From the NCBI GenBank assembly GCA_001655205.1, contig LPNZ01003347.1, positions 1 through 46,498 on the forward strand: DNA of 46,498 nucleotides, written 5' to 3'. Below, piece after piece: positions 1,143 to 41,631 of the stretch. This DNA comes from Lenisia limosa. Taxonomy: Eukaryota > Protista > Breviatea. The stretch's first letter is position 1. Each line of letters begins with the position of its first letter. The translations under genes and the position numbers were made by a program. Under the pieces are notes generated by a model. The model saw only the letters and a list, made by a program, of their open reading frames with translations, was not told where the DNA came from and ran no database searches.

Positions 1143-1261
1143 GGCTACGGTCATACTCTGGGGGTCATCGCGCATCCCGTCCGCTCTGCGAACGCAAGCC
1201 CCAGCAGGCCTTGGTAGTACTGACGTCGGAGACGAGTCGGGAAGGCAGGGTACTGTAGTTT
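1143..1261 (+). rRNA. 5S ribosomal RNA
   Basis: ~119 nt, GGCTACGGTCATAC...CATCCCGTCCGCTCTGCGAA...TAGTACTG...GGGAAG...ACTGTAGTT. The 5' GGCUACGGU pairs with the 3' ACUGUAGUU (helix I), and an oligo-T run follows immediately. Confidence 0.9.
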
Positions 1262-21300: not shown

Positions 21301-24300
21301 ATGAAGGCTGGTTTTTCAGGATTCAAAATTGGTGGTAGTGGAGCTAAGACGAAGAAGAACCCCAGAGCCAACATTTTCATCAAGAAGGAGAAGCAAAGAG
21401 TTGGTTGAGTTAAGGAAACTCTCTTATTGTTTAGGAACAAAGAGATCAGGAAGAGGCTAGCTCTGTTATTGACACCTTTGTCAATTCTTTCGATTCCAGA
21501 TATGCTGAAAAGCCAACAACAGCCGGATTTGTCTCCGGTGGAACCTTCAACCCTGAAACCAACCAGATGGACGGCGCTCCCAAGACACTTCCTCCCCCCT
21601 CTGCTCCCCCTGCACCTTCGAAGGCGTTGCTAGCCTCTATGGGACAATCAAATAAAAATGTTGGCTCCTCATCATTTGCTCTCTATTGATGACAATGGAC
21701 TTTAGATATTCCTGGTATTACTTGCAAGGATCATTTCTTTTCATTAATTACCCTATTTATATTTTCAAGTTTGTTCACATTTTTGAATATTGTTATATTT
21801 CTCCCGCTTATTATTCAAAATCATTCCTCTTTTGCAAGATAACCTCAGCAGACCACGCATGTGAGTAGTCCCCCTAAACCCAAGCCAGCCAGTTTTGCTG
21901 GTAAATCTGGCTTCTCATTTGGCGGCAAGCCTGGAGGTACGAGGACTTTGAAGCAATGGAAAGTTGTTTCAACGGTTCATCATCTCAGTTTGATCTAAAA
22001 ATGAACATCACAGCCAACTTCTAGAACTTGATTGTCAATTAACATTTCTGATGTATATAGAGAGAAAAAAGCCCACAATCAAAAGGGCCTTCAACCCTGA
22101 TGAGCAAGAGGTAAGCAAGGTTCTCCTGCTTAATACTCCCAAAATGAATGCTATTGTTGGCTAATTGATATTTGCCTTCGCAATTAGCTTCAACTAACAT
22201 GCAGATGGACACGCCGAAGGTCCAGCCAAAACGCTCAAAAAGGAACATCGACTCCTTTTTGGAGGAACTCAAAGCGTGGGACTTTGAGCTTACTTCATTA
22301 TGAATGGAGCTGATTTGTGACGGATAAGGAATACACTATTATTTGACAACAATCACTCTAATTTATTAGGGAGCAAGGGGAGCGTGATAAGGATTCCCAC
22401 TCCAGCAGGTTGGAATGGTACATATAAGGATTCCCACTCCAGCAGGTTGGAATGGTACATATAAGGATTCCCACTCCAGCAGGTTGGAATGGGACATATA
22501 AGGATTCCCACTCCAGCAGGTTGGAATGGTACATATAAGGATTCCCACTCCAGCAGGTTGGATTGGGACATATCGTTTTCACATTCTCTCTTTTTCTCGT
22601 TTCTAGCCACTCTTCATCTTGCTCCAGCCATTTTTACGAAATCAGCCATTCACACAGTCGCGGCGATGAGGGTTCTAACTTGCTCCACGGCCCCACCAAT
22701 AACTATACCGTGAAGGTGAGTGGGATATTGAAATGTGGTAACGGGATTTTTAGCTTTCATGACACCCACGAGCAAGTTGCATCCAGTCTTATTGTTTAGC
22801 CGACCTTTTCCAACCCAGTGGTTGAGGAGAAACAGCCTGAACCGGATGATGAAGAGTCATCAACGAACCTTTATGTTGGTAACCTTTCTCTCAGCGTTTG
22901 TGGGGCAGTCCTGATTGGCGGTATCGTATGCCACTTATTGATGTGTTTCTGAATTCTTGCGCTTAATTATTGATATTTACCCTGCAGGTGACTGAAGATG
23001 ACCTATCAGATGTGTTCTCAAGATATGGTCCAATCAACTCAGTGAAGGTACGGAGTCCAGGCAAAGCCGTTTACTGCTTGGTTATACTGAATTCCTTCTT
23101 TCACTTCTATATCTAACCCTTCAGATTATGACGAAGCGTGAAGAGAACCGGCGGCGTAACTGCGGCTTTGTGTCCTTTGTCGAACGCGTTCACGCGCTGG
23201 ACGCTCAAGACAACCTCGAAGGTCGGAATGGCGAGGTGGATCGTTATTACTGGTCAATGTTCCATCACAATCGCATTATCATATGAGGGCTTTTCAAGTG
23301 AGGTATAGTTTGACCTCCCCCCCCCCCCCNNNNNNNNNNNNNNNNNNNNNNNNNNNNNNNNNNNNNNNNNNNNNNNNNNNNNNNNNNNNNNNNNNNNNNN
23401 NNNNNNNNNNNNNNNNNNNNNNNNNNNNNGGAAGACCCGTACCTTGGGCGACAGAAAACATATACGGTGTGCTGGGTAGACTAGAGTACAAGCCCAGGAA
23501 ATAGTTTTTATTACGCTCACGCCACAGTTCATCCGAAGTGGCTGAAGCGGGCCGGTGTTCCCGAGGGTGCCAAGTCCTGCGTTGTGTACACCCCGCCGCC
23601 GGATAGGAAAAGCCTTATTGACCGCATGGTATGGGACTTTTGATCGCTACATTTGCAATGAACTTACAGGGACAGTCCCAGTTAACAGAGTTGACATTTT
23701 AGGTTCGGCTTGTTCTTCGCTACGGAAAAGAATTTGAGGTGAGCTATGCAATGAGAGGGGAGAGGGTTGAGGTGATTCCGTTTCTTACTACCCATAACCT
23801 TTATCTCGATTTAGTTTAACCGTCCTCTTTTTCACCACCTAACTGGCCCAGAAAATGGTCTTTGAGAAGGAATACACCAACCCAGATTTCGACTTCCTTA
23901 AAGTCCCACTGTGCCTTGAAAACAACTACTACAGGTATCGCGGTGCAAAGATGTCCTTTGCCATTTTCCGTAATACCCCTCTATATATAGCAATGAGAAA
24001 TAAAATAAGGTTGTATCTGGAGCTGTCCACTATAAACATATCGTACCTACTGTTGTATAAAAGTACGTTGCAAGAACCATGATATGGTATGCTCAAATGG
24101 TGTCTTAGTATCCCACCATATCTTCATTGGAATGGCTCAGATATTGGTGTAAGCATCTATTGGTGAATCTCATCCCCCCCCCCCCTNNNNNNNNNNNNNN
24201 NNNNNNNNNNNNNNNNNNNNNNNNNNNNNNNNNNNNNNNNNNNNNNNNNNNNNNNNNNNNNNNNNNNNNNNNNNNNNNNNNNNNNNCTGGTCGCTAGATG

Positions 24301-27300
24301 CACAGCAGCTGGTGGAGGACGGAGAGTGGTACGTGCCACCCCCATGTTCGCGGGGTCTCTTCACTAGTGTTTTTGCTCTAGAGCGAATATGCATGTAGTT
24401 GCCTTGGGTTATCAGTACTAACGATACAGACATTGCGGATGACTCTGTTGATGAGGTTCAAAAAGAACTGTAAGTTGATGTGCTAATTGTGTTTTTTGTA
24501 ATGTTTCCTCACTCTTCACATGAATGTCCTCCTCACACTCCCCACCCCCAGATCATCTGAGATCAAACTGAGAGCCCATCGTCGCGTTCTCTCCAATGAG
24601 GATGCAAAGGAGTGGGAGGACCTTTTGGCCTATGTCTCAATGGAGCGCGAGAGCGTACAGCGCTGTATGGGATTCGCTTTGGACAACGCCGAGTATTCAG
24701 AAGATGTAGGCGGAAGTAACTTCTGGACCTTGCAAACTGCCGAAAGAAACCAGGCTTGCTGAATCTTTTTGATTGACTCTCACTTGGTTATGACAAAACT
24801 AGGTGGTTGATGTGCTGATTGAGTCTCTCTGCCTCCCCGAAACATCTCTTCCCCCCAAGGTAAGGATGTGCTTTATATTCTGGTAGTTTTTTTTTTTGAA
24901 AAAAACCATGATGTGTTGACGCACTCTTTAGCTGGCTCGCCTCTACGTTCTCAATGATATACTCTTCAACACATCCTCCATTGCTAAGAATGCCCACAGC
25001 TACCGTACCCTGTATGCCGGGCTGCTTGCTGTCTTTTAGGCACTTGTTCTTCTTTCCTATTCCTCGTTCATGTCTATNNNNNNNNNNNNNNNNNNNNNNN
25101 NNNNNNNNNNNNNNNNNNNNNNNNNNNNNNNNNNNNNNNNNNNNNNNNNNNNNNNNNNNNNNNNNNNNNNNNNNNNNNNNNNNNNNNNNNNNNNTCCTCC
25201 AGAATCCGAGCTTCCAGTGTGACAAGACGGGTTTCTGGTGGGCTGGATGTAATGTGATCGGAGACATACTGGTCAAAAATCTCGAATTACTAACTCTATT
25301 GTAGAGGTGATCAAGTGCTGGGACAATTGGAGCCTTTTCCCAAGCTTTATCATTGAAGACCTCAAGTGAGCCTTTTATTTTCGACCGAAGTGAATACCAT
25401 GGTGTTCTTTAGAACATCCGCCATCATATTTTTCCGTCGTTCACCTTCCTTACTCCCCTCCCCAGTACGGCGTTGAATGCCAAACGTGAGGAAATTGAAG
25501 AGGCGCAGCAGAAGATCATTGAAGAGGAAAGCGTTTGGTCAATGTCAAAGAGGAAAAAGATGGAAAGAAAGAAGGTGGGACTCAATTCTTTATAATGAGT
25601 TATTTAAAATGAGTGATTTCGGGCTAACTCCCAAGGCTGAAGAAGCTCAGAAAGCCCTGACGGATGAGGTAATGAAATCGAACCAGTTGACAGCACTTCT
25701 CACACCCCCTGGTTCTCCGAGCAGTGAAGGTATGTTTCTAGCCTTTTTATTTCTCTTTTTTTCTTTTTTGGGTTATTTATTAGTGATTGCAAGTCTAGTA
25801 TCTTGTTTTTGTATTTCTGATATTTTTTCCTCCTTTCCATTATTCATGTGATTCTGACTTTTAGCTCTCACCCCACCCCCCACACCCCCGGGTAACCTAA
25901 CCTTCACGGACATTGAAACGCCGGTAAATGAGAAGGTTGTCGGCCTGTCCATGCCCCCCATGCCTAGCGCTTCCAATGGTAGGGGGGTTATCTATCTGAA
26001 GTTTTCCTTAACAGTGCTCTTGGTATTGTCAGATTAAGCCTTCATTCAAAATCCAACCTTATACTTGAGATGCTATGCCTGGAGCTACCCTAGCTGACCC
26101 GAGTCCTCTGGCTGGAACCACACCCTCAGGTACTTTCAATTTCTCTATTATGCAAATGTAGCACTGTCGAAATGTTATCTATTACATGCCAGTATGAAGA
26201 GATGTAAACAAAAATAATATCTTCCAGATATACCTGGTTCTACCCCAATGCCCGGTTCTACCCCAATGCCCGGTTCCTCCGCCATGCCCGGTTCCTTCGC
26301 CATGCCCGGTTCCTCCGTTATGCCCGGTTCCTCCGCCATGCCCGGTTCCTCCGTTATGCCCGGTTCCTCCGCCATGCCCGGTTCTACAACTATGCCCGGT
26401 TCTACAACTATGCCCGGTTCTACCCCAGGTAGGATCCTTTCAAATGCATATTCAGCTCTTTTCTGTTGAGTTGGTGTGCTATTTCTGTTGAGTTGATGTG
26501 TTCTTGGATTGTTAACCCACCCCCGTTGAACTGGACTGATCCAATTAGACATGCCTGCTCCTTTTGCTACTCCACAATTCTACCCCCAGCCCCCTATCCT
26601 CCCAACACCTGCTCAGCAGAGTAGGATGGATTTGGCTTTCAAGGGCTTTAATCTATGAGTGCTCTCCGTTTAAACCATGTTATATATGTACGTTGTATGA
26701 TTAATTCATTGGTGTAATGAGAAGTGGTATGGACTTTTTTTTAACCGAATTAGTCCCACACAATCAACCCATGGTCTTACAAAAACAAAGCGTGAGGGGA
26801 TGGATGAGTGTTGTTATTGTTGCTTTAAATGATATTTGTGTATTTTTCAGTACATGCTTTTGAGATGACGTTTCAGGCAAAGGAAGAGAAGGACATGGCT
26901 GCCTTGTCCGCCTCCCTTGCACAGGATAAGGCCAAGCTATTGGTAGGCAATCACCCATCTATGTTGATTTTCGTTTCAAAAATTATGATATGCTATTTTT
27001 CTTTGGCTTTACTGTCACTAATTTTTTGCTTACTGACACTTTCAGAAAACGCTTCAAGGCTAATGAGTTCCTTTAGATTTTTTCTAGTTCTTGCTGTATA
27101 TTATGTTGTCGTGATAGAAGTCAATTTACACACCCAGTCAACATTGAGTATTGTTTGTTGTTATTTGATAGTTGTATGGGCTAATCCTTATGGCTAATTA
27201 CTTGCTCACGTGCAACTGCCGTTTTTAGTTGTTTGGCTTTCGGTGCAAGTCTGATATCTTGGGGCCGTTTTTATGTTTTAATATGATTTTACAAGTCCCA

Positions 27301-29103: not shown

Positions 29104-30470
29104 CTAAGAAAACAACCCAAATTTATCCATACCCATTGTGACCAGACTAAGCTGGATATGCACTTTGCCGCTTGAAACTGTTCGTAGACGAGGGAACCTG
29201 CTGTGTTACCGCGTCTAATAACAGTTTTGTGTTACTAATCATTAACAAAGACAAAAACTGGCTGAAGCAGTCTAAATAATCACCTTGCTATGTTAAATGG
29301 AATATTTCATACGATACTATATTATTATATAATCCACATTCATTGTCGCACAAATCTCGGAAGGTGTCCAAAGTAATGTGAAGAGGAAATGGAAAGAAGA
29401 CTTAAATAAAAAGAAGAGGCTCATCCTTGGACAACAGAAAATAGTTACAATATTAGTCCACAAAGCCTATCAAAAAAAATCACCCGTGATTCCTGATAAA
29501 ATGTGCTGGTACCCTGTAGGTTCGACTGACCTGTCAGCAGGAGAGACGACAAGATCTTCGTTCCGCAACTGTGGATGCCCCCCCAGGAAAAACGCTATAT
29601 AAATTAGCGGATTGATATAAATAGAAATCAAATTGATGATAAAAAGGAGTAAACTGGAGAAAGGTGTGCTTCATAGACAAACAGTTAGGAATAAGCCCGT
29701 ACCCCACCTGAGACCTCCTCCATCAAGGAGCCTTGAGGCCGCCATGTTGGACACTCGAGTTCGTACATTCCCGGCGCCATTGGAACGTGCACCGAACCAT
29801 AGCCGGCTGGGAGGTCAGAGGAGGCCTTCCCATGGTCTAAAATAAAAGGTCTACTCTTGATATTTGCACGATTTATCGAGATATTTGTCTTGTGCTGGCT
29901 GTGAATACAAGCAATACAGCCGCTTTTGTGAATAACAAACACAATATTAAGCAGTACACTTCACAATATAAGCCAGGCCAACCCAGATCGTTACGTCCAT
30001 ACTGGTCCTGCGAAAAGACCTGAACGTAAAACCGAGGCCAGTCGGAGAGCCCCTTTGTCGAGAAATGAACATCCACAGGGTGACTCCAAACTGCGAACTC
30101 GTGGTCCTGTGTGGTCATCACTGCGTTAAAAACTTCAGGGCAAATGATATTTTTCGAGCTTGAAAAAATACTCCTATTTTCTATTTAACCAGTGTAGTAC
30201 ACTTGCTAATACGCTACAAAAAACAATGCAATAAAAGAAAAACAATGGCACCATTACAAACAAATGTAGAAAGTCTCCAAGATTAAAACACCCAAGAAAT
30301 AACCAAACAACACGACGCACCTCAGGCCAGTCCACTTGCGTCTGGCCGCGGTCGTAGCCCTCAATCTTGTCCCAACCGTTACCCGTGACAATGCCCCAAC
30401 GGCAAAAGAGGTTGTTGTTTGAGAAGTCGCTTCCTCCCACAACTTGCCCCACAATGTGAACTTCTGCCAT
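29104..30470 (-). CDS. B9D2: B9 domain-containing protein 2 (ciliary transition zone), 5 exons
   Basis: [123 protein letters not shown]. All introns are GT-AG. Confidence 0.95.
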
Positions 30471-34486: not shown

Positions 34487-36781
34487 TTAAAGGTTGAAAT
34501 GAATTGATTCAGAAACTAAAGAAATGGAAGAGAAAAGGGACCATGAAACACACAAAATCCAGGCAATGAATCCAATTACTGCCTGAATTGTTTTTTGAGG
34601 GGCTATGACAAACAAGGGGCCAGAGGAAACAGGAGCACTCTGCAAATGGTCAGTTATCTTGCTGAGATAACAATACTCCATAATGATGATACATGATCAT
34701 AGCAGATGTTAGACTACCTGTTATCAATACTTTTCCGGAACCCACAGGTAACAAGTCAAACGACACGCCTCCAACGGACTTCAAGAAAAGCGCAAGATAG
34801 CCAGCAATCAAGGCCGGGCCCAAGTACTGTAATGTCAAACATAAACGCTCCGACAGCCTGACGTCGGATTGGCTTTTAGATTATTTCTTATGCTTCCATA
34901 CCCAACTCAGAGTCTGTAATATCATCTTAACTGATATGTCATCGAGTCAATTTAAATTCTAGCAGAATGAAATAAAATGCATTTAAACAAGATAATAGTG
35001 TTTTCTTCAACACTGACAAACCTGCATTGCAATAATGGGCAGCATAAGTACCAGATTGGCAAGCTAGATGATGATTTCAGATAAAGTACAGCTTATTCCA
35101 TCCAGCGAAAAAAATTGAGAAGAAATTTGTCCACTCACTTTATTGGAGATAGTCTTTGGAGACTCTTCATCTTGTTTCATTTGCTCCAAATGCGATTTAG
35201 CTGAATTCAAATATAACTGCATGAATTCTAAATAAAAACTTGCAACTGAATCTTTAAAACAGAAAGCCGAGAAAGAGCCAGAAGCAACAATGATCCGATA
35301 AAGATCTGAAGGGACTGGAAAGAGTCCAGGCTGAATAAGGGGGAAAAGAATACTGAATTCCAATAAATGAAGCAAAATAAGAATTAATTGGATGAACATA
35401 GACTGCTGAAGCAAGGATGGGTGTCATGAAGTCCAAAAGAGAAACAAGTTTCCTGGTTAAGATTTTGACGCAACTTGGAAAGAGAAACTGTTGAGTCACT
35501 AAGGGACATTTGAAGAAGACGTCCCTGTCTCATGGCAGGAATGAAAGTGAGGGACGAAGTGAAGCAAGCCATAAAGGCCAAAAACACGGGATATAAACTG
35601 ACACCAGAAAACATTGCTGCAAACTCCCTTGAAAAGTAAAAGTGCACGTGTTAATAGTTGATGAGAAAATTTTCATGATGCTATTATATCAAGATCCTTT
35701 GCTAATTATCAAAAGTTACAATCTGAGAAGCATAGAAAAGTGGCAGAAGCAAATATAGTCCATCCATTGTTGATTTAAGGAGGTTACTAGTTAAATGACT
35801 AATATATTCTTCAATAATACAATCAAATACTCTACCATTATGATGAAGCCCTGATACATTCTTCTATAATACAACCAAATACTCTACCATTATGATGAAG
35901 CCCAGCAAACAATAAAGCAGAAGCGCTCTGTTCAGTCTCTTGAAGTGCAAAAGACCGCATCAAAGAGGCTTGAAGTGACGTTGAAAACCCGATCAGCTCT
36001 GCAAGATAAGTAAGAAATTCTTTACTGTAAAGACCCAATAAAGGATTCTTCCATGCTTCAAACTATCTCACCTTGGTCCAAATTGCTTAAATCAAGTAAC
36101 CACAAAGTTAGTAAGGATAAAATACTGGAAAGAAGGAGAATGAGTAGAATGAAAACAGAGCAAAGAAGACTCCAATAAACGCGGTTGCTATAAGGTATAG
36201 TTGAGATTGAGCAAAATGCTTCCAAGCAAAGAACACAGAAAACCTACAATATCAAAGAAAATATGGCTTACAGTGCATGGATAGAAACTGCAAGAGGTAC
36301 ATAGTAACCAGGGTGATTTGGTGTATAAAAGAAAACATTCCACAATTCAGCAATAACAAAACAAATAACCGCTGGTAAGAACCAAATCAAAAACCGTAGC
36401 AACATTCAGTTAAAAGAGTGGAGAAAGTTTGATAGTCATCGAAACGTATCACTGAGTCTTCGTCGAGCTTGAGATAGTCAACAACGACTACTTTGTTACC
36501 TTGACTGTGACAAAATTTTCGTCTTTGAGTTGGCTAGCGCAGTTCTTCTTTTGCTTTAACTGGTGATGTCGACGCTCCTTTCGTGGCAGATTTCTTGTCA
36601 AAAAAAACACAAACTGAGAATTGGAGACTAAGTAGTCTTGCTGCAAAATGCTTTCATGGTTTTTATGCAAAAGGCAAGAAAGATTATTGAGAATTTGTAA
36701 AGAGAGTAGCTGCAGGACCTTTGTTCGATAGAGAACAAAGCATGGCAGAACAATACTCAGGATGGAAGGCGGGATAAGCAT
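34487..36781 (-). CDS. TMEM161: TMEM161-family multi-pass membrane protein
   Basis: FLAFMACFTSSLTFIPAMRQG (cf. FLTFPGLRLA), LLDFMTPILASAVYVHPI, RLSVLKIQLQLYLNSAK (cf. RLAMMRSHLQAYLNLA), MQYLGPALIAGYLALFLKSVGG (cf. LQYLTPLILTLNCTLLLKTLGG), and C-terminal AVIGFIAWILC. Confidence 0.85.
36103..36125 (-). other. Candidate 23-nt GT-TG intron in TMEM161
   Basis: GTATTTTATCCTTACTAACTTTG carries a TACTAAC branch-like motif and an in-frame TAA. A canonical alternative with a 14-nt micro-exon exists but fits family homology less well. Confidence 0.5.
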
Positions 36782-37242
36782 GTTTTCTCCTTCCCTATTG
36801 ATAATAAAACAAGTTCAACTCCCCTACTATCAGTAGACTTTTCTTGAAGAGTTAATTAGAGGGGGGGGTGAAGTGTGCCCCTGTCGCGGCAAGTGGGTAG
36901 GAGGGGGTACTAGAAGAAGAAAAAAAGGGGGAAAGGACAAAAGAGAGAGAGGAAGCAAGTGAAGCAAGCAAGAGCAAAAGGGGGAAAGACTGATCTATGA
37001 TCTATTTGCTATTGGTCACCTCGTTCCAGCCTCGTTCCCCTCCTCTTGTTTCCTTTCTAATTGTTGTTGTGTGCGAGTTGTGTGGAGGTTGTGTGCACGT
37101 GTTACCCAGAAAGCAGGAGCTTCACAGAACGGACCCCCCAGTCGGATAGAGTCAGACGACTGACTTCGTGGGTTGGCTGACAAGTGATAATAGAATAATA
37201 GACAACATATATATCTAATTTGATCTATTCTGGTCATTTATC

Positions 37243-39123
37243 ATGCAGGGTATGAATTTGTATTATTTATTTTTTTGTTCTCTCTTTTCATTTATTGTCT
37301 CTGAAGTAATTCCCAAGTTATCTTATTCTTTTTTGTTTTTGCAAGCAGATTTCTCTTCTCTCATCTCTGTTTTCTTGGGGTAGCACAACTTTATTTTTCT
37401 TTTGGAAAGGACATAAAAAGAAGCAAGAAATTGTAACGCACAAAGCTGAATTCCCAACTCTCTCATTCTCCAGTGTTGAGCAAGATGACAGAAACCATTG
37501 ACGACAACATTTCTGAATCCAGGTTTGCCCAGAGAGCTGACCAATGTGTCTTGTCTGTGTTGTGATTCTTTGAGGGCTCATGGACTGTGGATGATATTTC
37601 TGAGGGAATATATAAGAGGTAGTAGTGCACAGAGATTATATTCAGTTCTTAAAATTACACAATGCAACGTTGTACAGTGTCAGTGATGCTTCCTTTCATG
37701 CAGTTATTGATACTCATTAGTGTTACATCTGAAAATAGGCATTTTATGTCTGTTGTTGAAGCTTTTAGCTTCTATCAGTTTTATGGTGGAAAGTTGATGA
37801 TTTATTAATAATTGTTGTTGGCTTGAAAAGATTAAACACAATCATTCACGGTTAAATGAGCATCAAAAAGAGGCCGTCGCAAAACTTGGTGTTAATGAAA
37901 GACTTCAAAATGTTCGCACCTCAATGTTTGTTGTGATCTTTGCTTATTGTCCTCAGACTAATCAATTCCGACTTTATCAATTTGATTCTTGGAGAAAGTG
38001 GATTTGTTTATCCGTCATATTTGGTTTCAGGTATTAAATACGACCTTCCTACAGAGAAACGTGAGTTCTGTATTTCCCATTTACCGTCCAGCGTTATCAA
38101 AAGACTTTGACAAAGTCTTGACAACTCTCAGACAATTCTGCCGTGATTGGTCGTCGGAAGGCCTGGATGAGCGCAATGAGTCTTATCTGCCGTGTAGGAT
38201 GGGGGGGGGGGACCAAAAAAACCCAAATCTACCATAATGGCGTAATGTTTGGGAGGTTGGGAGGAAGTGTGGGGAAATTATCTTCACCGATTTCCTCAAA
38301 ATTCATACAACAGTGCTCCAACTTCTGGAAAAGTACGTGCCAAGTGACATGCCAGAGAAACCTTCCGTCCTTGTCCCTGGTGCAGGATTGGGGAGACTCG
38401 TGTGGGAAGTTGCAATGAGAGGCTACCATGCTCAAGGTACTTGTTTATGTTCAACCTAGGAAATGAGGTGTCGTACTTCATGTTGTTGGCGTCCAATTTC
38501 ATTTTAAATAACTCTGCTTTTGTCAATGAGTTTCATTTGAGCCCATTTGCTTTGAGTAATCTGAATGTCTTCGCAAATAAGTTTGTGTTTATGCCTAACC
38601 AGCGACAACACTCGGGTCATCCACGTTCCTGACGTTCTCCCAGCCTCAATTCCCGAAGGTGTTCAGTTCTCTATGTGTGCCGGTGAATTCTTGGAAGTGT
38701 ACTCGCATTCTCCCAACTCCTTCAATTGTGTAATGACGTGCTTTTTCTTGGACACGGCTATGGTTGTAGTGGATTACATTGAAACCATATATCAGTTCTT
38801 TCTTTTCACTAACCTGTATCCTCAAGCCTGGTGGTGTATGGTTGAATTTAGGCCCGTTACTCCACCATTTCGCAGACTCCTCAGAAGCAACTGTGGAATT
38901 GACCTGGGAAGAAATTCGAAGCTACAATGAAATGATTGGATTTGAAGTCCTTGTAAGCCAATGAGGGTATGGTGTAATAGTTCAGGAGGAATCAAGGCAG
39001 CCTGCACGATACACATGTAACACAAGGAGTATGATGCGAGTCCACTATGACACTGTTATAATGGCGGCAAGGAAACCCATGGTTTGTTACCATAACCTGT
39101 ATTCATCATCAATAGAAGGGTAA
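37243..39123 (+). CDS. CARNMT1: Carnosine N-methyltransferase (N2227-like) (5' end approximate)
   Basis: [26 protein letters not shown]; [41 protein letters not shown]; [12 protein letters not shown]; [10 protein letters not shown]; [24 protein letters not shown]; [11 protein letters not shown]. Confidence 0.95.
38795..38816 (+). other. 22-nt non-canonical GT-TG intron in CARNMT1
   Basis: GTTCTTTCTTTTCACTAACCTG. Removing it restores [16 protein letters not shown], and no AG gives the right frame. Confidence 0.8.
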
Positions 39124-39206
39124 AGCTCTGTCTCCTCGAGCGTATCCTATTTCACAAATGACGTCTTCATCGCAGAACCCTGTTAGAGACTTGCCATTCC
39201 AATGAA

Positions 39207-41631
39207 CTACTGTAACAAAAGCTTGAGTTCGTCATCGGAAGGTGGCTCCCCAATTTCCACGTTATGGGTGTCGGGCTTCTCTTTTGGCCAGTATTTAACG
39301 TCGTAAACAACAATTGCCTTCTTTCCATTAGCCATATCCTTGGTCACAAAAAGGAAATTGAATTTGTCAATCCAAGCCCAATGAGGTGCTAAAACATGAG
39401 AGTTTGCCTCTCTTACCATGAGGCTGCTTTCTGATTTTCGAAATAGACCTGATTTCTTGGATTAGAGTTTCCTTCAAGCAATGAATTAGCTCAGTTTCAG
39501 AAGAAAAGAACTGGTGAGCGAAATAGAAATAAACGGCCGATTTCTTGAAGAACTTCTTGATAGCAGTGTTAACAGATTCAGAGACAACAACTTCCCTTAT
39601 GCGTCAGGACAATCTAATTCAATCTCAATCTCGACAATAATTCCCAAGACCTTCCCCCTTACTCAATTTCTTCAACAACATCTGTGAGCCAATTTGGGAT
39701 AGTTGCGTTTTCAGCGGAGTCAAACCGTGGTAGATAGGGCAAATAACCAGAAAGAAAAAACCTTAATATCAAGAATGGGGGTTCCATCAACCAAATCAAT
39801 ACCAGAAAGAATGATTGTTTTCCTATCCGCAGAGAATCCTTCAACCTAAAATTGTCATCCCTCAGTCCCACAAAAAGACGGAATATCTCGATACAATCCT
39901 CGTTAAAATTCGATATTGTACAGACCAGTCTATTTCGTTAGGAAGCTCCCGGGGAACCAATCCTTATCATATCTTGAAACATGTGATGTAGTGTGGACCC
40001 CACTTATTCGTTCGAGCGTGTGTGCTTTTTGCCAAGTGAATCCCTAGTCATAGCCATCTCCCCTCAAACCTTCGCAAGAGATAATCCAATGGGGTTCGGC
40101 CTATGCGGAGTTCGAGTTGAGAACATTCCAACCTAAAACAAGTCACATGATAGTTTTTGAAGAAGAAGAATGATAGATGTATTGGTTAACTCAAGAAAAA
40201 GGCAAATAAAAAAAAAAACACATAGTACATATGATATATTATATAGTAATATACGTATAGTATGCCATATCATATAATACTAGTAGTATATACTATATCA
40301 TACAATATCGTATGTATTTATATAATACATATAATATGATATATTATATCTATAGAAATGAGAAATAAAAACAAGGTTGTGTCTGAAAAAAAGATAAAAA
40401 AATGTCGAAAAATTACAACAACTAATATGATGTTCCAAATCTATGTGATTTGACATTCTATCTCAAGAGTTTTACAATTTGACACCGTTTGCCGACCCTT
40501 TTTCCGCCAAGCCGAGGAGGCGCTACCTTCCCTCTTGTTCTTGACGCCTTCGAGGCATCCTAATAAGATAAATGGAAAGCAGCAAAATGCGAAACCCTAC
40601 TTTGGAAATCGATCGTGCAGCTTTGTTCTTATTGTGGTGGAATTCAAAGAGGACCCAGCAGTGTGATGCACCCCAGTCGGCAAAGCATGACGGAGGGCTG
40701 CAGTCTGAAATATCATTCGTTAAAAGAATCCCAGTTCAAACACACCGCAATTATCATTCCTTTATTAGAATGCCCATAAAATGCGCAAAACAGTGACTAA
40801 TCTAATAAAAACTTCATCAACTTCAACACACCATATGGATCCCACCTTGGGCCGACAATGTTGGNNNNNNNNNNNNNNNNNNNNNNNNNNNNNNNNNNNN
40901 NNNNNNNNNNNNNNNNNNNNNNNNNNNNNNAACCCTCGAGGATTCTCAAATGGGCTCTGGAGTGAGGTACAATGTTGCCTTGACGTGGGCAGGCGTTGCA
41001 CTCTCTGAAGACCGACTTCAAATAGCCTGAGGGTGGCGGTGAGTTATTGTAGCTATGTCCATGAATCCAAATAATAGAAAGGCAAAACCTGGAAAAGCCA
41101 AAGGGTTGAGACCTTATTTAAACAGTTCTTACCGATAGGATTGCAAACAAGCTCCCTTTGCTGTTCAGCCGTAACCACAGCAGCTGGAGGATTCTAAAAG
41201 GTGAGGGTCTCAAAATGTTGTATATGTGGTACCCCTGTTGGAACACTTTTTTGGGGTGAAGGGGCTTGTATTTGCGCTTGGCATGAATTGAAAGTGCAAA
41301 ATATTGTGATCATAAAGCACTCTATCAATAATAATGTTTCACCGCTCCATGAGAGTGGTATCGAACAAGGGTCCGCCTACCACTTCTTCGTTTGTTTTTG
41401 GCTTCTTTGTGACAACATCCTCAGTGGGAGCGGTCTGCCTCTTCAGCTCGGACCCCGATCCCCGTTGAGCAGTCGCAAGCCTCAGCAAATCTGCTTCAAA
41501 TTCAGCGGAAAGATTCAGCTCTTTGAAGGAGGAGTCTTCTTCTTTTTTCAAGTTTTCTGTATTAAAATCAAATAAAACAAACCAAGGATATTATAGAGCA
41601 CTCTGGATGGTGCAATCAGATAGTCTTTCAT
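39207..41631 (-). CDS. TRMO: tRNA m6t6A37 methyltransferase TrmO (TsaA/YaeB family)
   Basis: [86 protein letters not shown]; C-terminal LIQEIRS. Start codon less certain. Confidence 0.95.
39740..39761 (-). other. 22-nt non-canonical GT-TG intron in TrmO
   Basis: GTTTTTTCTTTCTGGTTATTTG splits the invariant DIK|PY motif and contains no AG. The unspliced frame reaches TGA. Confidence 0.85.

What the first reader, a model, noticed from the sequence alone, without database searches (positions are those of the whole stretch)
39740..39761. GT-TG 22-nt intron inside the invariant TrmO DIKPY motif
The minus strand reads ...GAT ATT AAG | GTTTTTTCTTTCTGGTTATTTG | CCC TAT CTA CCA. DGTPxLDIKPY is invariant in TsaA/TrmO proteins. 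The segment has no AG, sliding the junction only gives GG-TT, and read-through reaches TGA. The rest of the gene is intact, which argues for function. No clear branch motif is visible, so length alone may specify the site.
Basis: partly seen in the sequence, partly recalled or inferred. Interest (0 to 1): 0.85.

Follow-up and report, generated by a model that had tools for sequence, protein, structure and literature searches.

The report
22-base TrmO intron ending in TG
An expressed, otherwise intact tRNA-methyltransferase (TrmO) gene of a flagellate protist is split inside its most conserved motif by a 22-base T-rich insert that starts with GT but ends in TG instead of the near-universal AG; it is most likely a real tiny intron, one of many of this type already seen in this genome.

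Summary
On the minus strand, 39761-39740 reads GTTTTTTCTTTCTGGTTATTTG between ...GAT ATT AAG and CCC TAT.... It contains no AG, and read-through reaches TGA after 16 codons.

Removing exactly these 22 bases gives a clean 376-aa ORF. That ORF aligns without a gap to E. coli TrmO across LVDGTPxxDIKPYLP. The Pfam TrmO_N score rises from 25.9 to 38.7 bits and reaches the end of the profile.

The DNA is identical in two independent assemblies at about 40x depth.

One poly(A) RNA contig confirms seven upstream introns, all GT-AG, including a 26-nt one. It stops exactly at the proposed donor, with two further letters that do not match the genome. So the RNA departs from the DNA at that point, but the TG junction itself was not seen. 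My single read-laying run used too strict a likeness threshold.

The convergent neighbour gene CARNMT1 needs a 22-nt GT..TG insert removed in the same way. That insert ends CTAACCTG, and a canonical twin ends CTAACCAG. All four 22-nt inserts in these two genes carry an A at -5; in TrmO it is the only A.

Verdict: a spliceosomal micro-intron with TG as its only acceptor (about 0.85). TG acceptors are known but rare (Micromonas; human, only as alternatives). Earlier follow-ups of this scan reported the same class at other loci of this genome, some with RNA support.

The parts
39740..39761 (-). 22-nt insert GTTTTTTCTTTCTGGTTATTTG, the proposed GT..TG micro-intron. It is phase 0, between the Lys of DIK and the Pro of PY.
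   Evidence: RNA contig X2 ends at 39762 plus 2 letters that do not match the genome.
39744..39744 (-). The only adenosine of the insert, at -5 from the 3' end; the candidate branch point.
   Evidence: The A of CTAAC is at the same -5 position in the 22-nt CARNMT1 introns. This is inferred, not mapped.
39762..39845 (-). TrmO exon 8 ([28 protein letters not shown]).
   Evidence: Covered by the RNA contig. Pfam TrmO_N positions 87-109.
39663..39739 (-). TrmO exon 9 ([25 protein letters not shown]).
   Evidence: Completes TrmO_N to profile position 116/116 when joined to exon 8. Aligns to E. coli PYLPFAESLPDAS.
39596..39662 (-). Predicted 67-nt GT..AG intron.
   Evidence: ORF continuity. Not covered by any laid RNA contig.
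39417..39595 (-). TrmO exon 10.
   Evidence: ORF continuity. Words of this region are held by RNA run X2.
39389..39416 (-). Predicted 28-nt GT..AG micro-intron GTAAGAGAGGCAAACTCTCATGTTTTAG.
   Evidence: ORF continuity.
39207..39388 (-). TrmO last exon with its TAG stop.
39846..40069 (-). 224-nt GT..AG intron.
   Evidence: RNA joint.
40070..40132 (-). TrmO exon 7 ([21 protein letters not shown]).
   Evidence: RNA contig. Pfam TrmO_N 30.7 bits.
40133..41631 (-). Upstream part of the gene, from the ATG at 41631. Exons are 41631-41583, 41556-41381, 41193-41133, 41026-40934, 40704-40601 and 40559-40497. Introns are 26, 187, 106, 229, 41 and 364 nt, all GT..AG.
   Evidence: All joints seen in the 795-nt RNA contig, with the 26-nt intron 41557-41582 shown as 'left out 26'. 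Sequences.
38795..38816 (+). Sister case in the convergent CARNMT1 gene: a 22-nt GT..TG insert, GTTCTTTCTTTTCACTAACCTG.
   Evidence: The joined peptide aligns to Pfam CARME 152-209 at 86.5 bits; the pieces alone score 43.2 (152-188) and 27.1 (190-209).
38581..38602 (+). Canonical 22-nt twin in CARNMT1, GTTTGTGTTTATGCCTAACCAG.
   Evidence: The joined peptide is contiguous on CARME 85-139 at 47.2 bits.

Best explanation
The 22 bases are a spliceosomal (U2-type) micro-intron of an expressed, functional TrmO gene. It is cut at AAG|GT on the 5' side and after TG on the 3' side, which restores DIK-PY. Proposed mechanism: the usual 5' GT is recognised. The single A at -5 (39744), within a U-rich stretch, serves as the branch point. 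The branch point lies only four bases from the intron end, and the intron is too short for a polypyrimidine tract plus AG to be read separately. So the 3' cut falls at the first suitable G at a fixed short distance from the branch, and U is tolerated at -2. Shown here: the DNA sequence; the exact 22-nt requirement for the conserved protein; expression and splicing of the gene; and the RNA leaving the genome sequence at the donor. Inferred: the TG junction in mRNA, the branch point, and distance-based choice of the 3' site.
For: The spliced model gives a 376-aa ORF. BLASTP against E. coli TrmO gives 37% identity and E 7e-29, with no gap across [19 protein letters not shown] / LVDGTPVVDIKPYLPFAES. 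Pfam TrmO_N scores 25.9 bits for exon 8 alone, 27.1 bits for the read-through peptide and 38.7 bits for the joined peptide, which reaches profile position 116/116. The RNA contig of poly(A) run X2 (795 nt, depth 10) joins eight exons over seven GT..AG introns, including a 26-nt one. It ends at 39762 with 2 extra letters that do not align to the genomic GT. X2 also holds about half of the sampled words of 39207-39850, so the downstream exons are transcribed. The DNA is identical in two assemblies. All ten introns of the gene begin with GT. CARNMT1 needs a 22-nt GT..TG removal at a Pfam-anchored place and has a CTAACCAG twin of that CTAACCTG intron. An A stands at -5 in all four 22-nt inserts. 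There is no local RNA structure (z = 0.95) and no repeat family. Precedents: Micromonas BOC1 introns with EST-validated TG/CG acceptors (PMC3879977) and Stentor 15-nt introns with the branch A five bases before the 3' end (PMC9505925). Leads not tested by me: earlier follow-ups in this genome report RNA-confirmed TG/CG-ending introns of 21-27 nt in PP1, RuvBL1 and DDX6.
Against: No RNA sequence spanning AAG|CCC was seen. The RNA contig stops 2 letters past the donor instead of running on, which points to a branch in the assembly graph. Possible causes are mixed products (for example 22- and 23-nt removal, which would share CC and then differ) or partial retention. No transcript-derived protein of this gene exists in the protein collections. 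The C-terminal 130 residues have no detectable homologue, so only ORF continuity supports that part of the model. The DNA and RNA runs come from one study.
Confidence: 0.85

Rival explanations
1. The 3' cut is imprecise or heterogeneous. The spliceosome removes 22 nt in some transcripts and 21, 23 or 31 nt in others, so only part of the mRNA encodes full-length TrmO.
For: The RNA contig ends exactly 2 letters past the donor. Products of 22-nt removal (AAG|CCCTAT) and 23-nt removal (AAG|CCTAT) share CC and then differ, which would break a de Bruijn contig at just that point. Removal of 31 nt (AAG|CCACGG) also shares CC and stays in frame.
Against: The two letters were not shown, so this is a fit after the fact. 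A heterozygous site or low coverage would do the same. Only 22-nt removal restores the conserved PY.
Confidence: 0.08
2. The 22 nt are retained. The gene is a recent pseudogene, or it makes a truncated protein that ends 16 codons after DIK.
For: The 3' end is non-canonical, and no spliced junction was observed.
Against: The RNA contig does not continue into the genomic GT. The ORF stays open for 130 further codons over two more predicted introns. The same kind of insert sits in CARNMT1 and reportedly in many essential genes of this genome.
Confidence: 0.04
3. The insert is removed by something other than the spliceosome, such as a tRNA-type endonuclease with ligase, IRE1-like cleavage, structure-guided euglenid-type excision, or DNA elimination.
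For: The insert is very short and lacks an AG.
Against: There is no bulge-helix-bulge or end-pairing structure. It begins with GT like all other introns of the gene, and a canonical AG twin exists next door. The DNA holds it at full depth and there are no TA borders.
Confidence: 0.02
4. The insert is a sequencing or assembly artefact, or it is skipped by ribosomal bypass.
For: None found.
Against: Two assemblers give the same sequence at about 40x. The RNA differs from the DNA at the boundary, which a translational bypass would not require.
Confidence: 0.01

Closest known systems
Micromonas BOC1 introns with TG or CG acceptors (Verhelst et al. 2013, PMC3879977)
   Same: They are short, AT-rich introns with GT donors. 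A subset uses TG or CG as the acceptor, mostly validated by ESTs, and they have no clear branch motif.
   Different: BOC1 introns are confined to one low-GC chromosome region, and only 34 of them are non-canonical. Here the intron is 22 nt, lies in ordinary 40-45% GC DNA, and 3 of the 5 introns of 23 nt or less in two neighbouring genes end in TG.
Human TG alternative 3' splice sites (Szafranski et al. 2007, PMC2374985)
   Same: They are U2-type introns with a GT donor, and TG is used as the 3' terminal dinucleotide.
   Different: In human, TG is never the only acceptor and needs an AG within 28 nt. Here there is no AG inside the intron and the next AG is 58 nt downstream, so TG would be the only acceptor.
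Tiny introns of ciliates (Stentor 15-16 nt, PMC9505925), myxobolid myxozoans and dicyemids (median 22-27 nt, PMC13644364)
   Same: The length class matches. These introns have reduced splice-site motifs, and the branch A lies a few bases from the 3' end (Stentor: five bases follow the A; here four).
   Different: Those introns are described as GT..AG. The present organism mixes introns of 22-31 nt and of 100-360 nt within one gene.
TrmO/TsaA tRNA m6t6A37 methyltransferase (E. coli YaeB, Pfam PF01980)
   Same: The host gene has the TrmO_N domain, with PRLGG, RPNPIG and DGTPxxDIKPY all present.
   Different: It has a 90-residue N-terminal extension and a C-terminal 130 residues with no detectable similarity.

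Membership tests
U2-type spliceosomal intron | 5' terminal GT | tested here: met
   The insert begins GTTTTT after AAG. All ten introns of the gene begin with GT.
U2-type spliceosomal intron | 3' terminal AG | tested here: not met
   The insert ends TTTG and contains no AG anywhere.
U2-type spliceosomal intron | Branch-point adenosine upstream of the 3' end | tested here: inconclusive
   There is a single A at -5 (39744), at the same position as the A of CTAAC in the CARNMT1 22-nt introns. The branch was not mapped.
U2-type spliceosomal intron | Absent from mature mRNA with exact exon-exon ligation | tested here: inconclusive
   The RNA contig leaves the genome at the donor (39762 plus 2 unmatched letters), but no contig across the junction was laid.
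U2-type spliceosomal intron | Lariat intermediate | not testable with these tools
   This needs lariat sequencing or debranching assays.
U12-type intron | 5' RTATCCTT and branch site TCCTTRAY | tested here: not met
   The 5' end is GTTTTTTC and there is no TCCTTAAC-like element.
Human-type TG-AG tandem acceptor | A partner AG acceptor within 28 nt | tested here: not met
   There is no AG in the intron, and the first AG downstream comes 58 nt after the TG, out of frame.
Micromonas BOC1-type short introns with TG/CG acceptors | Short, AT-rich, GT donor, TG or CG acceptor, validated by transcripts | tested here: inconclusive
   The insert is short, 73% A+T, GT..TG. Transcript validation of the acceptor is missing here. 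Residence in a low-GC outlier region is not met (GC is about 0.43 locally).
Euglenid non-conventional or tRNA-type (BHB) intron | A secondary structure that brings the ends together | tested here: not met
   MFE -9.2 kcal/mol, z = 0.95, and 167 of 200 shuffles fold at least as well.
Ciliate-type internal eliminated sequence | TA borders and absence from somatic DNA | tested here: not met
   The borders are G/G and the insert is present at full DNA depth in two assemblies.
TrmO/TsaA (PF01980) host gene | TrmO_N domain above the Pfam threshold, with the DIKPY end | tested here: met
   30.7 bits for exon 7 and 38.7 bits for the joined exons 8+9, against a cut-off of 26.8. E 7e-29 against E. coli TrmO.

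The most novel reading that the evidence does not exclude
In this organism the spliceosome does not need an AG for its shortest introns (about 21-25 nt). The 3' cut would be set by a fixed distance of four to five bases from the branch adenosine, with only the terminal G required. TG, and reportedly CG, would then serve as the only acceptors in many essential genes, a lineage-wide relaxation of the GT-AG rule.
Probability: 0.45. Interest if true: 0.75.

Novelty: new variant of a known kind. Interest (0 to 1): 0.6.

Why it matters
The terminal AG is among the most constant signals in eukaryotic gene expression. In human, TG works only beside a nearby AG (PMC2374985). A genome where 22-nt introns in conserved genes use TG as the only acceptor would be a natural test case. 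It would show how the second catalytic step picks its site when the branch point lies four to five bases away, and whether the step that reads the AG is dispensable.

There is also a practical side. Standard gene finders allow only GT/GC-AG, so they will break or truncate genes such as this TrmO and the neighbouring CARNMT1. Proteomes predicted for this lineage will then be systematically damaged.

I found no paper in the searched library that describes this for breviates.

Tried and rejected
1. Read laying at the default 95% likeness. Micro-intron gaps count as differences: the 795-nt contig with one 26-nt gap fell in the 95-99 bin. A 3' contig with a 28-nt gap, and possibly a 22-nt gap, was therefore probably dropped.

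2. The search of protein representatives with exon 10. The only hit was a spurious repeat protein.

3. The search for homologous proteins with the 92-aa frame over exon 9, and with a scaffold alignment of all exon pieces on a 297-aa non-coding frame to widen the length filter. Only the window's own genomic ORFs and antisense-proS ORFs came back, so no transcript-derived or annotated TrmO of this organism is in the collection.

4. Myxozoan or dicyemid origin, suggested by PMC13644364. I set this aside because long and tiny introns are mixed, GC is about 42%, and a ciliary B9D2 gene is present. This is weak evidence.

5. A window-wide ORF-bridging scan for micro-introns. It was too noisy. Its hits in B9D2 (29936-29957) and in the U2SURP-like gene (24480-24503) lie inside longer GT-AG introns.

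6. A canonical alternative, GT at 39761 to the AG 58 nt downstream (80 nt). It shifts the frame into stops and deletes the conserved PYLP.

7. Pfam support for a further CARNMT1 GT..TG candidate at 37793-37814. None was found.

Full report
**What is there.** On the minus strand the window reads ...GGA ACC CCC ATT CTT GAT ATT AAG, then GTTTTTTCTTTCTGGTTATTTG (39761 down to 39740), then CCC TAT CTA CCA CGG TTT GAC.... The 22 bases are 68% T, hold a single A and have no AG. Shifting the cut by one base gives GG..TT with the same product. Reading through gives DIKVFSFWLFALSTTV and then TGA. The 22-mer is unique in the window. The region has no unusual RNA structure (z = 0.95).

**The gene.** I built the gene from the RNA joints and from ORF continuity. 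It has eleven exons, from the ATG at 41631 to the TAG at 39207-39209.
- The introns are 26, 187, 106, 229, 41, 364, 224, [22], 67 and 28 nt long.
- All begin with GT, and all but the 22-nt one end in AG.
- With the 22 nt removed the ORF is 376 aa.
- BLASTP against E. coli TrmO (L002) gives 37% identity over 154 residues, E 7e-29. The alignment runs without a gap through [19 protein letters not shown] / LVDGTPVVDIKPYLPFAES.
- Pfam TrmO_N scores 25.9 bits for exon 8 alone (profile 87-109), 27.1 bits for the read-through peptide, and 38.7 bits for the joined exons 8+9, which reach the last profile position 116/116.
- A canonical alternative, using the first AG 58 nt downstream, shifts the frame into stops and deletes the conserved PYLP.

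**DNA.** The Logan contig of DNA run X1 matches 36500-40377 with no difference at depth 40. A SPAdes contig from an ENA assembly (L001) is identical from 36659 to the N-run at 40865. The insert is therefore in the DNA at full depth. Both assemblies probably rest on the same reads, so this is not fully independent support.

**RNA.** Run X2 is a poly(A) RNA-seq run filed as metatranscriptomic, from 2016. It gave one 795-nt contig at depth 10.
- The contig covers 41731 to 39762 and joins eight exons across seven introns, all CT..AC on the plus strand (GT..AG on the gene strand). A 26-nt micro-intron, 41557-41582 (GTTTGTTTTATTTGATTTTAATACAG), appears as 'left out 26'.
- So the gene is expressed, and micro-introns are really removed in this organism.
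- The contig ends at 39762, the last base before the 22 nt. Two further letters of the contig did not align, so they differ from the genomic GT. The RNA thus departs from the DNA exactly at the proposed donor.
- The 3' side was not seen, because no X2 contig was laid on 39207-39739. Yet X2 holds 0.49 of the sampled words of 39207-39850. If all four exons there were present, about 0.65 would be expected.
- The likely reason is my threshold. Gaps count as differences, and the 795-nt contig with one 26-nt gap already fell in the 95-99% bin. A shorter 3' contig with a 28-nt gap would fall below 95%.
- Why the contig stops two letters past the donor is open. One fit is a mixture of 22-nt and 23-nt (or 31-nt) removal, whose products share CC and then differ. 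This is a guess made after the fact.

**No help from protein collections.** Exon 10 has no homologue among 1.8 billion representative proteins. Two word-index searches found only the window's own genomic ORFs. One used a scaffold alignment to widen the length filter. No annotated or transcript-derived TrmO of this organism is on record there.

**The neighbour gene.** CARNMT1 lies on the plus strand and converges on TrmO. It shows the same feature.
- A 22-nt GT..TG insert at 38795-38816 (GTTCTTTCTTTTCACTAACCTG) splits DYIETIY / ILKPGG.
- The joined peptide aligns to Pfam CARME positions 152-209 in one piece at 86.5 bits. The two sides alone match 152-188 (43.2 bits) and 190-209 (27.1 bits).
- About 200 bp upstream a canonical 22-nt intron, GTTTGTGTTTATGCCTAACCAG (38581-38602), ends in the same CTAACC followed by AG instead of TG.
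- The gene also has 23-nt and 31-nt GT..AG introns, and one more GT..TG candidate (37793-37814) that Pfam could not test.
- Across the two genes, three of the five introns of 23 nt or less end in TG. All introns of 26 nt or more end in AG.
- Each of the four 22-nt inserts has an A at -5. In the TrmO insert it is the only A (39744).

**Mechanism.** The best reading is a U2-type micro-intron. The GT donor is read as usual and the lone A at -5 is the branch point. The 3' cut falls at a G a fixed few bases further on, with U tolerated at -2.

From general knowledge of spliceosome structures (recalled, not checked here), the 3' AG is read late. Its G pairs with the first G of the intron and its A contacts the branch adenosine. 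A site held in place by a four-base tether could plausibly relax the -2 requirement. Stentor's 15-nt introns place the branch A five bases before the 3' end (PMC9505925), which shows that such geometry works.

The steps shown here are the sequence, the exact 22-nt requirement, expression of the gene, and the RNA leaving the DNA sequence at the donor. The steps inferred are the TG junction, the branch point and the distance rule.

**Comparison with what is known.** TG acceptors exist.
- In human they are always alternatives to an AG within 28 nt and never the only site (PMC2374985). Here no AG lies within 57 nt, so that family's defining feature is not met.
- Micromonas BOC1 introns are short and AT-rich. 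They include 34 with TG or CG acceptors, mostly EST-validated (PMC3879977). This is the closest precedent, but it is confined to a low-GC chromosome region.
- Animal introns of 22-27 nt in myxobolids and dicyemids are described with AG ends (PMC13644364).
- The insert matches neither U12 signals, nor euglenid or BHB structure, nor ciliate IES borders.

**Context in this scan.** Earlier notes on this genome list the same class in MYST, PRP8, SWR1, DIM1, coactosin, RPA1, PP1, RuvBL1 and DDX6. Follow-ups report exact removal in RNA for PP1, RuvBL1 and DDX6, and one names the organism as the breviate Lenisia limosa. I did not test those loci or the identity. The run date, the mixed-culture poly(A) library and the presence of a ciliary B9D2 gene are consistent with it. 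I found no paper describing such introns in breviates.

**Verdict.** As a single locus it is one more member of a class this scan has already met in the same genome. The class itself is a new variant of a known rarity: TG as the only acceptor, here in introns of about 22 nt.

Noticed in passing
window 38795-38816 (+) and 38581-38602 (+): CARNMT1 (Pfam CARME) carries a 22-nt GT..TG insert ending CTAACCTG and a canonical 22-nt twin ending CTAACCAG. Pfam collinearity supports both junctions.
   Followed up: yes
window 37793-37814 (+): Another possible GT..TG micro-intron in the N-terminal part of CARNMT1 (GTTGATGATTTATTAATAATTG). Versions of 25 and 28 nt, also ending in TG, keep the frame too. 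No Pfam support was available.
   Followed up: partly
window 41557-41582 (-): A 26-nt GT..AG micro-intron in the first coding exon region of TrmO. The RNA contig shows it removed exactly.
   Followed up: yes
window ~29560-30469 (-): A B9D2-like gene (ciliary transition zone) with GT-AG introns of about 165-210 nt. Its C-terminal exons, with 17-18-nt candidate inserts near 29470-29540, could not be resolved.
   Followed up: partly
window ~22800-25000 (+): A gene with RRM and Surp modules, like the splicing factor U2SURP/SR140. It is interrupted by two N-runs.
   Followed up: partly
window 1143-1261 (+): A 5S rRNA gene (Rfam RF00001, 73.5 bits).
   Followed up: no
window 40300-40499: DNA word depth rises to 130x, against about 40x elsewhere. 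Several contigs break in an AT-rich 'tatata' stretch inside the 364-nt TrmO intron, which suggests a dispersed repeat.
   Followed up: no
window 40865-40930; L001: The N-run in TrmO intron 4 is a scaffold gap. The SPAdes contig L001 bridges it with about 56 real bases, 10 fewer than the N-run.
   Followed up: partly
window 38201-38211 (+): A G11 homopolymer inside a CARNMT1 intron region coincides with a loose end of a DNA contig.
   Followed up: no
Read laying behaviour: Gaps from micro-introns count against the likeness threshold. RNA contigs of this intron-dense genome therefore drop out at the default 95; a threshold of 85-90 is needed.
   Followed up: no
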